Virus record (IMG/VR): IMGVR_UViG_3300008261_000001
Location: 186,001 to 250,000 of that record
Length of the DNA: 64,000 nt
Direction: 5' to 3' (one strand)
Position 1 is the stretch's first letter, and each line of letters begins with the position of its first letter. Made by a program: the position numbers and the translations under genes. Under the pieces are notes generated by a model. It ran no database searches. It was not told where the DNA came from and saw only the letters and a list, made by a program, of their open reading frames with translations. Below are positions 9,583-52,855 of the stretch, piece by piece.

Positions 9583-9656
9583 TTGTGTTCTCCATAGGTT
9601 GGTCTGATCTCATTGGATAAATCATAGAACGACTATTAAAGCAGTATAAAGGATAA

Positions 9657-9707
9657 ACTAAGGGGGGGTTCCTAGCATACCCCCCACGCTAGGAACCCCC
9701 CCTTAGT
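9657..9707. repeat. perfect 20-bp inverted repeat
   Basis: ACTAAGGGGGGGTTCCTAGC - 11 nt - GCTAGGAACCCCCCCTTAGT. Confidence 0.9.
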
Positions 9708-9726
9708 ATATTGTGCCGATTATGTC

Positions 9727-10191
9727 TTAGTACTTGTTGAGGTAGTTATATTTAGCTCTACAAGCACCTGAGGTACGACCGAGGTTTTCCCCTATTTTTG
9801 GAAAGGGCATCCCACTATCTCTTAGCTCAATGAGCTTATCCAAATCCTCTGTAGACCACGGCTGTTTGTAGAGGGTGAGACCGAGGCTCGCAGACTTTAA
9901 GCGTATAGACTTACAAGTCCTCTTTGGTAGTAGCTTCTCAAGCTCTATGGCTGAGAGAACACCAGCGTTCTTCTTGAGAATATCTATTTCCTTCTTAGAC
10001 CACTCACGAGGGCTTGGTCTTGCCTTCCACCCCCTTGCCCTAAGGCTTATGCCGAGAGAGGCTATCTTCGCTTTAACACCTGACTCCCCACGACCGAGGC
10101 GTTCGGCTATGACACTAGCCGAGAAGTACATACACATCGCCTTGAGGATTTTTACCTCTTCTTCGCTCCACATTTTACGCGAGTAAGCCAT
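9727..10191 (-). CDS. tandem Myb/SANT-like HTH DNA-binding protein
   Basis: Three W(S)xx(E/D)xxxL repeats, each followed by an LGR(T/G)xxxxxxK-like helix. Confidence 0.75.
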   Translation of the reverse strand: MAYSRKMWSEEEVKILKAMCMYFSASVIAERLGRGESGVKAKIASLGISLRARGWKARPSPREWSKKEIDILKKNAGVLSAIELEKLLPKRTCKSIRLKSASLGLTLYKQPWSTEDLDKLIELRDSGMPFPKIGENLGRTSGACRAKYNYLNKY

Positions 10192-10239
10192 ATGCCCTCT
10201 CTGATGAGATATGAGGTTTGGTTTACTGCGTTATAGGAT

Positions 10240-10503
10240 TTAATCCTCTAGGTTGATAGCCTCACTCTTAGACACATAGAGGGGTGTATGTTCACCCATG
10301 TAGGATCCGAGTACATTGTATTCGAACCACTCCCAAGCCATCTCATTCGCTCGTTCTTCATCGGTCTCCGCGTCTTGGAACTCTTGAGTCCAATGAGAAA
10401 TCATAGCGTCAAGGTCATAGACGAGCTTGGGTGTACCTTGAGCTACGCCTATGATCATGGGGTCGAAGGTCGATCTGGGTTCGAGGTAGATTAAATCTTC
10501 CAT
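10240..10503 (-). CDS. phage hypothetical protein
   Basis: AWEWFEYNVLGSYMGEHTP resembles a recurrent phage family. Confidence 0.75.
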   Translation of the reverse strand: MEDLIYLEPRSTFDPMIIGVAQGTPKLVYDLDAMISHWTQEFQDAETDEERANEMAWEWFEYNVLGSYMGEHTPLYVSKSEAINLED

Positions 10504-10553
10504 TTTTGGTGTTCCTTTTTATAAGGGGTGTGGTATAGTACCTACGATAGTAA

Positions 10554-10627
10554 GCACTCGTAGCTCAGTTGGATAGAGCACCTCTTTCCTAAAGAGGGGG
10601 TCACAGGTTCAAATCCTGTCGGGTGTA
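10554..10627 (+). tRNA. tRNA-Arg(CCT)
   Basis: CCTCT-TTCCTAA-AGAGG arm; TGGTATAGT -10 upstream. Confidence 0.93.
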
Positions 10628-50052: not shown

Positions 50053-50081
50053 CCTCAGTCCTCATCCCCTCAAGAGCCGTA

Positions 50082-50954
50082 TTAGTATCCAAAGTCCTCT
50101 GAGTTTTGGGAGATGACTTTCTCGATTTGGTCGATGTGCTTTTTAAGCACCACTACTGAAACACCACGAGCCTCTGCCCAATCGTTCTGGTTTTGGAAAG
50201 TCTCGTCTACCTTGTCACGATAGATTTGGTAGCGGATACCCCCCTGCTCTTCACCGAACTTTTGGTTGAGAAGGCGTTGGACATGGTTAGAGACCGATTC
50301 AGCTTCGGCTATCTTTTCAGCCTCGGTGGAGTAGTCGGCATAGAAGTAGTCGGTTTCCGTTTTTTCAGGGTTGTCCTCGTTGGTTCGGATAACCTGCTTG
50401 GCTGAGTTTTCCGATATGTAGGCGTAGCGTGAGCCTCGCTTACACTCTTGTTGGGTCTTACGACCGCGTTGGCGTTGAAGAGCGTCTTGCCCCTCCACCA
50501 TGCTCGCCCGCCAGATGAACTGCTTAAAGTGGTAGAAGATGCTGTTAAAGGTGGGGTCTTTGCCCTTAACCAACATTGGAGAGAGGTTGTCTTTCTCACA
50601 CAGAAAGACAACAAAGTCGTGGTAGTAGTCCTCAAGGTCTTGCATTGCAAATGCGGTAGTGCTGTCCCTTGCCCCATGACGGAGGCAAAAGTCCTTGAGC
50701 TTCTCGTAGTTTACAGACTTGCCCCCAAAGAGCCAATTTTCAGTCGCGTTCGTCTTACGCTTTTGACCGAAAGCCTTTGGTCTCTTAACTTGAGATGTGA
50801 CCTCATAAGATGCCACCTGTAAGAGCACATCCGACCAATGCTCTTCCTTGAGAGTCGCCCTTGAGATTTGAGCCTCCACTTGAGCGATCTGCTCTTTCAG
50901 AGCGTCCGCTTGGGCGTAGAGGCGGGTAAGAGTATCCTTTAAATTTTTCAACAC
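50082..50954 (-). CDS. divergent sigma-factor-like protein
   Basis: Region 2-like DLEDYYHDFVVFL and region 4-like HTH WAEARGVSVVVLKKHI. Confidence 0.5.
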   Translation of the reverse strand: MLKNLKDTLTRLYAQADALKEQIAQVEAQISRATLKEEHWSDVLLQVASYEVTSQVKRPKAFGQKRKTNATENWLFGGKSVNYEKLKDFCLRHGARDSTTAFAMQDLEDYYHDFVVFLCEKDNLSPMLVKGKDPTFNSIFYHFKQFIWRASMVEGQDALQRQRGRKTQQECKRGSRYAYISENSAKQVIRTNEDNPEKTETDYFYADYSTEAEKIAEAESVSNHVQRLLNQKFGEEQGGIRYQIYRDKVDETFQNQNDWAEARGVSVVVLKKHIDQIEKVISQNSEDFGY

Positions 50955-51179
50955 TATGGGTCTCCTCGTACAGAGGGTTAGGTGTGCCTTAAGGGTTAGT
51001 CACCAGGCACGGGAGTACACATAGTAGGTACATCGAACATAAAAATCAAGTTCAAAATCAACCCCCCCAGAAAAAAGATCGTAGAGGTGTGGGTGTGGGG
51101 GGGAGACTCGAAAAAGATTTTTTTTTGTTTATACCCCTGCTCTTGCAAACGAAACCGATCTGAGAAATGGATACTTATA

Positions 51180-52787
51180 ATGGATAAGCAACTACAACGA
51201 GTGGGCATGATGTTGGAGCTTAGTGGTCTAGCTGAGACCAACAAGCAAGCCTCAGAAATCTTAGGGCTGTTACGCAAGCAAGCTGGAGTAGACAAGTTCG
51301 CCATGATGCCGACGAAGTGGAAAGACTCAAAAAAGAGTTATCATGGCACGATACCCTTAGACTCTTTACAGGGTTATTTCGTTCAGATGTGGTGGGGTGC
51401 TTTAAAGAAGCTAGGTTTGACAACTCTTGAGTGTCCACCTACATCGGACATAAAGGTACTCAGTCGTGCTTTGGGTGCGTCCTCTTTGTTCGGTAAGCTC
51501 ATTAAGAATCCGCTTCCAGATTCAGACCCTCGTAAAGTCCTTTGGGCTTCATTAAGGGAGGCTTGGAACAAGCACAGCACGGATTTCGAAACCTCTTGGA
51601 ACAGGATTTTCGAGAGAGCTTATAACGCCACGAACTACATCAGAGGGGATAAAAGGATACCTGACTCTGAAACACGAACACAGCTTGAGATGGAGCAAGC
51701 CTCTGCGGTGTTCGATAGGTACTTTAAGGGCAATAAACTTTACACATTTGTGCAGAGTCTGAACCTTAGTAATCCCGAGTCTGTTTTTGAGCAAGCCTCG
51801 GCATTGGTGGTTTCTAATATCGCTAATGGGAACCACTCTTCAAAGTCAGTCTCTACAAAGCCCACGGACTTTGAGGCTCCAGAGGGTGGTGAGGCTTACA
51901 ACTTCAGTGCTGAGGATGCCTTTATTCCTTACGGTTACACAAGGGACAGTGGCAACACTCCACTTACTGATGCTCAACTACAAACCAACCAACAGATTTT
52001 GGAGGAGGCGGAGAAGCAAGAGGATTGGGCCGAGCTTGTTCGTGATATGCAAAAGAACGATCCAGATTTCTACAAGGACTTAATGGATATTGTATCCGAA
52101 ACTGTAGAGATCAAGAGGTTGTCTCCTGAGGCGGTTTTATCCACAAAGATTACTACTCTAGCACAGATGGAGATCCTTGCTACGCTCATAGACGACTGCT
52201 TATCGGCAGAATCTAGGGATAGGATAAAGAGGTCTGCTCTTTCAAGCATCAAGGCAGGCACATACGCGATTCTCTATGCGTATCTTGTGATGGCAGGTTT
52301 CACTTTTAGCACTCGTGAAGGGGAGAGCGTCACCATTAAGTTATCTGGAAACCCCTTCTTGGTTAACTACAGATCTTTCCAAAGGGATGTGGCAGTACCG
52401 CTAAGGTTAGCGGATGACTTTGAGAGGGTGGTCTCACGCTTGTGGGGGCTCATTGAGAAGTACATACCCAAAAAGCTCTTTAAGGCGGACTTAGAGACCT
52501 TTAGCACACAGATGCAGAAACTTGTGTTCGGTGGTGTTCACCCTGGTGTTGCTTTCCCTGAGATCACCCTAAAGGACAGCCGTTGGTTCTTGGTTTCTTG
52601 TCTTAAAGAGTTCATTCGTTTGAGGATGATTCTTGAAATCTCGGACGAGGATGTTTTAGAGGAGTTCGAGCCAGAGATGGATGGGGATTTGTGTATTAAG
52701 GCTCTTAGGGCTATCACGATTGCTCCCACACAGATTGTAGAGGAAGCGAGATTAGCCCTCATTAGTAGTATCGAGAAGAGAAGGTAA
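51180..52787 (+). CDS. hypothetical helical protein
   Basis: Long ORF; N-terminus RVGMMLELSGL..RKQAG; likely start 51180. Confidence 0.7.
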   Translation: MDKQLQRVGMMLELSGLAETNKQASEILGLLRKQAGVDKFAMMPTKWKDSKKSYHGTIPLDSLQGYFVQMWWGALKKLGLTTLECPPTSDIKVLSRALGASSLFGKLIKNPLPDSDPRKVLWASLREAWNKHSTDFETSWNRIFERAYNATNYIRGDKRIPDSETRTQLEMEQASAVFDRYFKGNKLYTFVQSLNLSNPESVFEQASALVVSNIANGNHSSKSVSTKPTDFEAPEGGEAYNFSAEDAFIPYGYTRDSGNTPLTDAQLQTNQQILEEAEKQEDWAELVRDMQKNDPDFYKDLMDIVSETVEIKRLSPEAVLSTKITTLAQMEILATLIDDCLSAESRDRIKRSALSSIKAGTYAILYAYLVMAGFTFSTREGESVTIKLSGNPFLVNYRSFQRDVAVPLRLADDFERVVSRLWGLIEKYIPKKLFKADLETFSTQMQKLVFGGVHPGVAFPEITLKDSRWFLVSCLKEFIRLRMILEISDEDVLEEFEPEMDGDLCIKALRAITIAPTQIVEEARLALISSIEKRR

Positions 52788-52794
52788 AATCCCT

Positions 52795-52852
52795 TATCTA
52801 TTTATGATGACACCCATGTAGAGAAAACACACTCTTCGTGGAGTGACATCAT
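52795..52852 (+). promoter_or_regulatory. TTTAT box plus RBS-occluding hairpin ahead of baseplate operon
   Basis: TATCTATTTAT, then ATGATG..CAC.CCATG../..CGTGG.GTG.CATCAT enclosing GGAG. Confidence 0.6.
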
Positions 52853-52855
52853 ATT

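What the first reader, a model, noticed from the sequence alone, without database searches (positions are those of the whole stretch)
9583..52855. Recurring promoter-like TTTAT box fused to a hairpin that occludes the ribosome-binding site
Seen: a sense motif TA(A/G/T)Y-N1-3-T(T/C)TAT lies about 30-65 nt upstream of starts at 9582, 13253, 13780, 19977, 23761, 26878, 33745, 37689, 38901, 40035, 41613, 43690, 44019, 44677, 46279, 47864, 49007 and 52856. In most cases a stem begins within a few nt of the box and its 3' arm covers or abuts the GGAG. Examples: TACTCCA/TGGAGTA at 38908-38964 and 43691-43723; a 15-bp stem at 26886-26926; a 14-bp stem at 37698-37730. Stem sequences differ while pairing is kept. 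Known: T4 uses this logic for a few late genes (e, 49, I-TevI). Inference: it is generalised here. Read-through transcripts would be silent, while starts at this promoter would drop the anti-SD bases, letting late genes be scattered among early ones. tRNA genes instead show TGGTATAA extended -10 boxes.
Basis: partly seen in the sequence, partly recalled or inferred. Interest (0 to 1): 0.75.

Follow-up and report, generated by a model that had tools for sequence, protein, structure and literature searches.

The report
Phage promoter box with RBS-masking hairpins
An uncultured 290-kb freshwater phage places a conserved TTTAT(A/G) promoter-like box 30-65 nt upstream of about a quarter of its genes. 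Where another gene reads into such a box, the leader folds into a gene-specific hairpin that buries the ribosome-binding site, apparently a genome-wide version of a trick phage T4 uses at four genes.

Summary
The window is part of a 290,179-bp uncultured freshwater jumbo phage. Sense-strand TTTAT(A/G), usually preceded by T-N2-TA(A/G), lies 20-80 nt upstream of 72 of 311 called genes. It occurs in 61 of 191 intergenic leaders against 8.5±2.8 in shuffles, is strand- and position-specific, and shows the same positional peak in five related phage genomes.

Hairpins are tied to the box only where an upstream gene reads in. Opening the ribosome-binding region costs 13.5 kcal/mol (70% above 10) for box genes behind a co-directional gene. 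It costs 7.0 for box genes behind a divergent gene and 8.2 for box-less genes.

The masking bases lie between the box and about +9. A transcript starting about 7 nt after the box drops the cost from 16.4 to 7.2. Pairing is gene-specific, and none of 34 hairpins has a T tail.

The T4-like reading (genes e, soc, 49, I-TevI) is therefore the best-supported mechanism, but no transcription start site could be measured.

"Late genes among early ones" is not supported. The box also precedes DNA polymerase, helicase and clamp loader, and the nearest upstream promoter is usually another box. The coupling is weak or absent in the relatives.

The parts
38963..38968 (-). TTTATA box, 61 nt upstream of start 38901 (taatagtttaTTTATA)
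38908..38964 (-). 57-nt leader hairpin. The outer arm TACTCCA (overlapping the box) pairs with TGGAGTA (the SD). Opening energy is 16.8 kcal/mol in read-through RNA and 1.1 if the RNA starts at box+7.
43722..43727 (-). TTTATA box upstream of start 43690/43684
43691..43723 (-). 33-nt hairpin, TACTCCAGTTAGG / CCTAACTTGGAGTA, ending at the start codon. Opening energy 17.2 falls to 5.8.
37733..37738 (-). TTTATG box, 43 nt upstream of start 37689
   Evidence: box kept in orthologous leaders
37698..37730 (-). 14-bp stem whose 3' arm carries the GGGAG SD. Opening energy 14.6 falls to 4.5.
26927..26932 (-). Variant box TTTATT(A), 48 nt upstream of start 26878
26886..26926 (-). 15-bp stem, AACTCCATAGAGGGG / CCCCTCTATGGAGTT. 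Opening energy 23.5 falls to 1.7.
33798..33803 (-). Variant box TTTATT upstream of start 33745, a paralogue of 38901. Opening energy 15.0 falls to 4.5.
20019..20024 (-). TTTATA box upstream of start 19977. A 10-bp stem masks the SD and is NOT released by a start at box+7 (15.4 to 11.9): an exception to the model.
13735..13740 (+). TTTATG box, 39 nt upstream of start 13780, inside a 55-nt divergent gap where it is the only promoter-like motif
8110..8115 (-). Opening energy 13.9 falls to 7.2.
6154..6159 (-). TTTATA box, 49 nt upstream of the DNA polymerase A gene (start 6104). The upstream neighbour is divergent and there is no masking hairpin (6.9).
44064..44069 (-). Variant box TCTATA upstream of start 44019, with a masking stem (13.1 to 8.2)
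44723..44728 (-). Variant box TCTATA upstream of start 44677 (10.3 to 5.1)
46318..46323 (-). TTTATG box upstream of start 46279. The stem is not released by a start at box+7 (10.7 to 13.5): an exception.
52801..52806 (+). TTTATG box, 49 nt upstream of the baseplate gene (start 52856). Opening energy 10.6 falls to 1.9.
40097..40102 (-). TTTATA box upstream of the glutamine-synthetase-like gene (start 40035). Opening energy 9.2 falls to 2.4.
41659..41664 (-). TTTATA box upstream of start 41613 (9.9 to 3.5)
13300..13305 (-). TTTATA box upstream of start 13253 (8.8 to 1.9)
9645..9650 (-). TTTATA box upstream of start 9582; no masking structure (4.9)
23804..23809 (-). TTTATG box upstream of start 23761; weak structure (7.9)
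47826..47831 (+). TTTATG box upstream of start 47864; divergent neighbour, no masking (5.5)
48952..48957 (+). TTTATA box upstream of start 49007; divergent neighbour, no masking (5.5)

Best explanation
T-N2-TA(A/G)-N4-TTTAT(A/G) is a single-element promoter with no -35 partner. It is used by this phage clade for a large middle/late-type gene set covering replication, lysis and virion genes. It is probably read by host core RNA polymerase carrying a phage-encoded sigma; a 207-aa ECF-like sigma is present in this genome and in the four large relatives searched for it.

In this genome, wherever such a promoter lies behind a co-directional gene, the DNA from the box to the start codon encodes one gene-specific hairpin. 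Its 3' arm holds the Shine-Dalgarno sequence, and often the AUG. Its 5' arm is the box itself plus the next ~9 nt.

RNA that reads through from upstream contains both arms and is translationally masked. RNA initiated 5-10 nt downstream of the box, the usual distance for a -10-type element, lacks the masking bases and is translatable. Translation of each such gene is thereby tied to firing of its own promoter.

What is shown: the motif, its positional statistics and conservation; the predicted structures; where the masking bases lie; the dependence on a co-directional upstream gene; and the absence of terminator features.

What is inferred: that the box is a promoter, which polymerase or sigma reads it, where transcription starts, and that the predicted masking operates in vivo.
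For: Motif:
- Enrichment, strand specificity and position.
- The extended motif has no conserved element 16-18 nt upstream.
- Present in short divergent gaps.
- Same positional peak in five relatives with GC 31-48%, and the box is kept in orthologous leaders whose downstream sequence differs.
- A sigma-like ORF exists with homologues in the four large relatives searched for it.

Structure:
- Box leaders fold more stably than shuffles far more often than other leaders (z<-2 in 49% against 16%; p=1.4e-5).
- Opening energy of -14..+4 is 13.5 kcal/mol for box genes behind a co-directional gene (n=46, 70% above 10). It is 7.0 for box genes behind a divergent gene (n=17) and 8.2 for box-less genes behind a co-directional gene (n=78); p=8e-7.
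- The contrast survives removal of paralogues and restriction to extended-motif sites (p=3e-4).

Geometry:
- In the 34 masked leaders, mean opening energy falls from 16.4 (5' end upstream of the box) to 13.3 (at the R of the box), 7.2 (+7) and 5.8 (+10), then stays flat.
- 24 of the 34 are released between +1 and +9.
- Hairpin span tracks the box-to-ATG distance (r=0.87).

Specificity:
- The cognate box-segment/TIR duplex averages -12.75 kcal/mol against -7.0 for non-cognate pairs, and the cognate is the best partner in 14 of 41.
- The second codon is AGA, which can pair with the box through G-U pairs, in 18% of box genes against 5% of others (p=0.002).

Not terminators: 0 of 34 have a T-rich tail, and none is picked up by the terminator scan.

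Precedents: T4 genes e, soc, 49 and I-TevI (PMC3014915); the single-element phiEco32 gp36 promoters with starts 6-8 bp downstream (PMC8948821).
Against: - No transcription start site is known. The only RNA runs found held four short contigs.
- Seven of the 34 masked leaders stay masked for any start within 20 nt of the box, for example 19977 and 46279 in the window.
- The box/hairpin coupling is weaker in relative G004 (10.1 against 7.1, p=0.03). It is not significant in G002, G005, G007 or G008, so it is not a conserved property of the promoter class.
- In 21 of 34 cases the read-through would come from another box promoter of the same class, so there is no obvious temporal benefit.
- Alignable copies give no significant covariation: one compensatory pair among seven paralogous leaders.
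- All energies are in-silico predictions at 37 C, and gene starts come from my own simple gene caller.
- The sigma looks two-domain (ECF-like), which fits a bipartite promoter better than a single box.
Confidence: 0.5

Rival explanations
1. The hairpins mainly serve the upstream transcript. They would act as processing sites (for example RNase III-type), 3'-end stabilisers, or factor-dependent stop signals that cut read-through RNA into units. They would overlap the next gene's promoter and ribosome-binding site only because the gaps are short, so masking would be a by-product or would be relieved by cleavage.
For: Hairpins are present only where an upstream co-directional gene ends. They have 12-28 predicted pairs, median 20.5, which is long enough for double-strand-specific RNases. 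The upstream promoter is often of the same class, so a purely temporal rationale for masking is weak.
Against: None of the 34 has a T-rich tail, so they are not classical intrinsic terminators. The hairpin lies downstream of the box rather than between the stop codon and the box. The 3' arm systematically includes the SD and often the AUG. Box-less gaps of the same size behind co-directional genes are much less structured (8.2 against 13.5).
Confidence: 0.2
2. Transcription starts at the final purine of the box, as with the phiKZ nvRNAP motif TATG or T7-type promoters that end in TATA before +1. Every primary transcript would then carry a 5'-terminal hairpin. That hairpin would stabilise the mRNA and throttle translation, or would need a phage factor to open it.
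For: In the sites I collected the box ends in TAT + A/G, and TTTATA and TTTATG are enriched while TTTATC and TTTATT are much less so. The conserved 16-nt single block resembles promoters that run up to +1. PhiKZ late promoters are TATG with the start at the G (PMC12809450). Several giant ORFs remain unannotated and could hide a polymerase.
Against: No single-subunit or multisubunit RNA polymerase gene was detected. With a start at R the mean opening energy stays at 13.3 kcal/mol, which would leave helicase, clamp loader and endolysin genes poorly translatable. A 5' stabiliser should be as useful behind divergent neighbours, yet those leaders lack it. Pairing often extends into the box itself, and the second-codon bias fits that pairing. 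That matters only if the box is transcribed in some RNAs.
Confidence: 0.15
3. The box is not a promoter but an RNA-level signal. A U-rich single-stranded UUUAU at the foot of a hairpin would serve as an endonuclease (RNase E-like) site or a binding site for a translational regulator.
For: The box is no more frequent at genes behind divergent neighbours (25%) than at genes behind co-directional ones (23%). It is AU-rich and sits directly 5' of a stem.
Against: A further conserved T-N2-TAR lies 5-10 nt upstream, outside any structure. Boxes without hairpins are common (38 of 72) and occur in divergent gaps as short as 55 nt where a promoter is required. In relatives the box is kept while the hairpins are not.
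Confidence: 0.08

Closest known systems
Phage T4 genes e, soc, 49 and I-TevI (also mobE of Aeh1): a late promoter embedded in the 5' arm of a hairpin that masks the ribosome-binding site (PMC3014915)
   Same: The promoter element lies in or directly at the DNA encoding the 5' strand of a hairpin whose 3' strand holds the SD and/or AUG. Longer transcripts are predicted to be masked and promoter-proximal ones open. An endolysin and an HNH endonuclease are among the masked genes here too.
   Different: The promoter sequence differs (TTTATR with upstream TAR, not TATAAATA). The scale differs: about 34 strongly masked genes of 311 here against four in T4. Replication genes are included. The read-through mostly comes from promoters of the same class rather than from early promoters. 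No experimental start sites or translation data exist for this phage.
phiEco32 gp36 sigma and its single-element middle/late promoters tAATGTAtA, with starts 6-8 bp downstream (PMC8948821)
   Same: [quoted passage not shown]
   Different: The consensus differs. The sigma here matches an ECF-type profile through region 4, whereas gp36 lacks region 4. Which factor reads the box here is unknown. No masking hairpins are reported for phiEco32.
phiKZ non-virion RNA polymerase late promoters, 5'-TATG-3' with the start at the G (PMC12809450)
   Same: A short AT-rich motif ending in TAT + purine, in a jumbo phage.
   Different: No multisubunit polymerase genes were found here. The motif here is longer (about 16 nt). 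A start at the purine fits the structural data worse.
Rho-independent terminators and T7-type RNase III sites in phage intergenic regions
   Same: Stable intergenic stem-loops between co-directional genes.
   Different: No T tract follows any of the 34 stems. The stems lie downstream of the promoter-like box and include the SD and AUG of the next gene.

Membership tests
T4-type promoter-embedded TIR-masking hairpin (e, soc, 49, I-TevI) | SD and/or AUG sequestered in a helix in the longer (read-through) transcript | tested here: met
   Predicted only. Opening energy exceeds 10 kcal/mol in 34 of 72 box genes and in 70% of those behind a co-directional gene. The SD is paired in the MFE structure of most.
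T4-type promoter-embedded TIR-masking hairpin (e, soc, 49, I-TevI) | The promoter lies in the DNA encoding the 5' strand, so promoter-initiated RNA lacks the masking bases | tested here: inconclusive
   The geometry fits: the masking bases lie from the box to about +9, and 24 of 34 are released for starts at +1..+9. The start site itself is unmeasured, and 7 of 34 are never released.
T4-type promoter-embedded TIR-masking hairpin (e, soc, 49, I-TevI) | gp55-type late promoter TATAAATA; masked genes are late and the read-through is early or middle | tested here: not met
   The motif is TTTATR. Box genes include DNA polymerase, helicase and clamp loader. The nearest upstream promoter is another box in 21 of 34.
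Intrinsic (rho-independent) terminator | G+C-rich stem followed by a T/U tract | tested here: not met
   0 of 34 hairpins have 5 or more T in the 8 nt after the stem; the mean is 1.5. None of the box hairpins appears in the terminator scan of 33001-53000.
Sigma-70-type bipartite promoter | -35 TTGACA-like and -10 TATAAT-like hexamers 16-18 bp apart | tested here: not met
   No conservation 16-18 nt upstream of the box. Sigma-70-like sites are not enriched in 33001-53000 (18 against 26.8 in shuffles).
Single-element promoters of phage sigma factors (phiEco32 gp36 type) | One conserved AT-rich element, no -35, phage-encoded sigma, start 6-8 bp downstream | tested here: inconclusive
   The single element and a sigma-like ORF are present. 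Sigma homologues are present in the four large relatives searched. The start site and the sigma-promoter assignment cannot be tested with these tools.
phiKZ/AR9-type nvRNAP promoters | Phage multisubunit RNA polymerase genes present | tested here: not met
   No RNA_pol_Rpb2_6 match in the genome, although all 14 control genomes matched. No polymerase hit among the large ORFs scanned.

The most novel reading that the evidence does not exclude
This phage gates translation by transcript origin at genome scale. About 35-45 genes would be translated only from RNA initiated at their own TTTATR promoter and would stay silent on any RNA reading in from upstream, including RNA from neighbouring promoters of the same class. 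Each cistron of a tandem array would then be an independently dosed unit without needing terminators. That would be a general organising principle rather than the handful of special cases known from T4.
Probability: 0.35. Interest if true: 0.75.

Novelty: new variant of a known kind. Interest (0 to 1): 0.6.

Why it matters
If the predicted start sites are confirmed, this would be the first case in which promoter-embedded masking of the ribosome-binding site is the rule for a large share of a phage's genes rather than an oddity of a few T4 genes. That suggests a way for compact genomes without terminators to decouple the dosage of adjacent genes.

It also defines a promoter motif for a widespread, uncultured clade of freshwater jumbo phages. 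The motif can be used to annotate transcription units in metagenomic genomes.

Finally, it supplies dozens of natural, sequence-diverse promoter/hairpin cassettes for testing how 5'-arm truncation controls translation.

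Tried and rejected
- RNA evidence. Two searches of public runs found many DNA metagenomes from lakes but only two metatranscriptomes, holding 6-9% of the words of the putative capsid gene. 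Laying four RNA runs on genome 154001-159990 gave four contigs of 166-381 nt and no usable 5' ends.
- Phage RNA polymerase. Pfam searches of the genome for T7-type and Rpb2 domains found nothing, though the T7-type control was uninformative. PHROG and Pfam scans of about 20 large ORFs also found nothing.
- Nearest annotated phages. There is no nucleotide match. By protein, the nearest are a 485-kb uncultured phage, LR745208.1 (47-64% identity), and Tunturiibacter phage Tunturi_5 (29%), so no transcriptome can be borrowed.
- Covariation. Orthologous leaders in relatives are too diverged to align. The seven paralogous cassettes give one compensatory pair, which is not significant. A search for more copies of the paralogue found only fragments from a single metagenome sample, one of them identical.
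- Box at cluster-leading genes. It is not enriched there (25% against 23%), so this test could not tell a promoter from an RNA motif.
- Replication of the hairpin/box contrast in relatives. It is weak in G004 and not significant in G002, G005, G007 or G008.
- Terminator reading: rejected.
- Chance: rejected.
- Literature search for TTTATA as a phage promoter found nothing relevant.

Full report
**Context**

The window is bases 186001-250000 of a single 290,179-bp IMG/VR virus record, estimated 93% complete, GC 47%. It encodes a family-A DNA polymerase, baseplate proteins, terminase, portal, prohead protease, ribonucleotide reductase, helicases and many tRNAs. Near-identical DNA occurs in some twenty lake and freshwater metagenomes.

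There is no nucleotide match among deposited phages. By protein, the nearest are an uncultured 485-kb phage (LR745208.1) and, distantly, Tunturiibacter phage Tunturi_5. The host is unknown.

I called 311 genes with a simple codon-usage/SD/ORF procedure. All gene-based statistics depend on that caller.

**The box is real**

- TTTATA is the most enriched hexamer in the 100 nt upstream of starts (56 against 7.5 expected).
- TTTAT[AG] in the sense orientation peaks 30-70 nt upstream of starts (71 of 95), while its reverse complement is flat.
- Of 191 intergenic leaders, 61 carry it at 25-75 nt, against 8.5±2.8 in dinucleotide shuffles.
- Aligning 76 sites extends the motif to T(-10)..T(-7)A(-6)R(-5)W-Y-Y-N-TTTAT-R, with no conserved element where a -35 would lie.
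- TCTATA and TTTATT are minor variants.
- In all, 72 genes (23%) carry a canonical box.

**The box recurs in the clade**

Orthologues of the gene at 36913-37689 in about 20 distinct related contigs mostly keep TA(A/G)-N-TTTATA at a similar distance, while the sequence after it is unrelated. Two complete relatives (312 kb, GC 38%; 316 kb, GC 31%) and three partial ones (GC 46-48%) all show the same sense-strand peak at 30-60 nt.

**Other promoter classes exist**

- tRNA genes have TGGTATAAT-like extended -10 boxes.
- A strongly conserved bipartite motif, TTATCCCAA-N12-17-(C/T)TATTAG, often in back-to-back pairs, sits 60-90 nt upstream of about 20-29 other genes.
- Classical sigma-70 -35/-10 pairs are not enriched in 33001-53000.

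**Which polymerase reads the box is unknown**

No T7-like or multisubunit RNA polymerase was found. The T7-like search had no positive control, and several giant ORFs remain unannotated.

A 207-aa ORF outside the window (genome 270787-271410) matches a sigma-factor PHROG and, end to end but below cut-off, the ECF-type sigma-70 profile. It has homologues in all four large relatives searched.

**The hairpins are real and tied to the box**

Box-to-start leaders are more stable than their shuffles much more often than other leaders are (z<-2 in 49% against 16%).

I measured the free energy needed to open positions -14 to +4 around the start codon. In a 100-nt read-through context:

| Gene class | Mean opening energy (kcal/mol) | Share above 10 | n |
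|---|---|---|---|
| Box, co-directional upstream gene, gap ≥45 nt | 13.5 | 70% | 46 |
| Box, divergent upstream neighbour | 7.0 | 12% | 17 |
| No box, co-directional upstream gene, same gap | 8.2 | 28% | 78 |

The box versus no-box contrast gives p=8e-7. The contrast between co-directional and divergent neighbours survives removal of the paralogous copies and restriction to sites with the extended motif (p=3e-4).

This is the most informative result. The hairpin is not part of the promoter, because boxes behind divergent neighbours lack it. It is not a general feature of intergenic gaps either. It appears where RNA can read into a box-bearing leader.

**Where the masking bases lie**

For the 34 leaders with opening energy above 10 kcal/mol, I moved the 5' end of the RNA stepwise:

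| 5' end of the RNA | Mean opening energy (kcal/mol) |
|---|---|
| 6 nt or more upstream of the box | 16.4 |
| Final purine of the box | 13.3 |
| Box +4 | 9.0 |
| Box +7 | 7.2 |
| Box +10 | 5.8 |

Beyond +10 the value stays flat. The mean for box-less genes is 7.3.

- 24 of 34 fall below that mean for a start between +1 and +9.
- Three are released earlier.
- Seven are never released within 20 nt. In the window, 19977 is one of these seven; 46279 is counted as released at +11 but is still masked at box+7 (13.5).

Other geometry:
- The hairpin fills the whole interval; its span correlates with the box-to-ATG distance (r=0.87).
- In many leaders the AUG pairs with the TAT of the box, through one G-U pair.
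- Consistent with that, the second codon is AGA in 12 of 66 non-paralogous box genes against 13 of 239 other genes (p=0.002).

**Pairing is gene-specific**

The segment from the box to +12 pairs with its own ribosome-binding region at -12.75 kcal/mol on average. It pairs with those of other box genes at -7.0, and a control segment 22 nt further upstream pairs at -5.7. The cognate is the best of 41 partners in 14 cases.

Classical covariation could not be shown. Orthologous leaders are not alignable, and the seven paralogous cassettes give only one compensatory pair.

**Not terminators**

None of the 34 hairpins is followed by a T-rich tract. The terminator scan of 33001-53000 finds a genuine terminator-like stem with a T tract just downstream of tRNA-Lys (46809-46834) but none of the box hairpins.

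**Interpretation**

The geometry is what the T4 precedent predicts. In T4 genes e, soc, 49 and I-TevI, longer transcripts sequester the SD/AUG, and a late promoter lies in the DNA encoding the 5' strand, so late transcripts are open (PMC3014915). For -10-type single-element promoters the start lies 6-8 bp downstream (phiEco32 gp36; PMC8948821). That is exactly where masking is lost here. I therefore rank the T4-like mechanism first.

Three qualifications apply.

1. No start site has been measured. If initiation were at the final purine, as at phiKZ TATG promoters (PMC12809450), the hairpins would persist in primary transcripts.
2. The 'late genes among early genes' rationale fails. Box genes include DNA polymerase, a large helicase and clamp loader as well as endolysin, HNH endonuclease, portal and baseplate. 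In 21 of 34 masked genes the nearest upstream co-directional promoter-like site is another box. A better description is that translation of each gene is tied to its own promoter.
3. The coupling is strong only in this genome. It is weaker in G004 (p=0.03) and not significant in four other relatives. It is therefore a lineage-specific elaboration, or my motif-based classification is too noisy in those genomes.

**Rivals kept**

- The hairpins act on the upstream RNA (processing or 3' stabilisation).
- The start is at the box purine, giving 5'-terminal hairpins.
- The box is an RNA-level signal.

Each rival is less consistent with at least one of the following: the position of the hairpin downstream of the box, the systematic inclusion of the SD/AUG, the contrast between co-directional and divergent neighbours, or the conservation of hairpin-less boxes.

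**Verdict**

This is a new variant, at much larger scale and with a different promoter, of a known regulatory design. Experimental start-site mapping is still needed.

Noticed in passing
genome-wide (G000:C1), e.g. 38306(-)/38348(+), 49551(-)/49626(+), 128475(-)/128517(+), 167701(-)/167721(+); in the window at about 17986(-) and 38552(-): A second, very well conserved promoter-like class: an A/T tract, then TTATCCCAA, 12-17 nt, (C/T)TATTAG and a G-run. TTATCCCAA occurs 40 times, 29 of them intergenic, and peaks 60-90 nt upstream of starts, almost only at genes without the TTTATR box. Copies often form back-to-back divergent pairs in regions of small ORFs. In many copies a short C-run/G-run inverted repeat brackets the TTATTAG. 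The motif is absent from relatives G004 and G002. It may mark the early class or the true target of the phage sigma.
   Followed up: partly
whole genome; many copies inside the window's genes and leaders (e.g. 13745-13753, 37705-37725): The 9-mer TTATCCAAT(A) occurs 154 times counting both strands, against about 2.6 expected from base composition. It is the most frequent 9-mer in the genome. Most copies lie inside genes, in both orientations, with a frame bias. It also recurs in the loops or stems of box hairpins. There are only 1 and 12 copies in relatives G004 and G002. Function unknown (a binding or modification site?).
   Followed up: partly
window 220-294, 809-881, 10554-11282, 46836-46908, 47271-47344: Nine tRNA genes. 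Several have a TGGTATAAT-like extended -10 within the 30 nt upstream, which is a third, host-like promoter type. A terminator-like stem with a T tract lies at 46809-46834(-), just downstream of tRNA-Lys.
   Followed up: partly
window 38581-38901(-), 32975-33745(-); genome 21576, 22022, 149811, 150466, 159599 (+): A family of seven paralogous genes (106-256 aa), most beginning MRTAS(E/D)V, each carrying a copy of the same box + hairpin + SD cassette. The promoter and leader were duplicated together with the gene.
   Followed up: partly
G000:C1:270787-271410 (+), outside the window (L001:1336-1959): A 207-aa sigma-like ORF (ECF-type profile end to end, below cut-off; PHROG sigma factor). A TTGAC-N17-20-TAnnnT site lies about 77 nt upstream. 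Homologues (35-52% identity) are present in all four large relatives searched.
   Followed up: partly
window 38989-40035(-) and 33846-35186(-): A glutamine-synthetase-like gene (both GS domains) and a DUF7487 protein with a weak CP12-like stretch. These may be auxiliary metabolic genes, and the CP12 hint may point to a phototrophic host.
   Followed up: no
window 57192-64000 (+): A 2451-aa ORF that begins just after the baseplate-J gene and runs past the window end (genome 243192-250547). It explains the apparent ORF desert there.
   Followed up: no
all box genes: Unusual excess of AGA as the second codon (ATGAGA) in box genes: 17 of 72 against 13 of 239 in other genes, with an internal codon frequency of about 1%. 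AUGAG can pair with UUUAU of the box through G-U pairs.
   Followed up: partly
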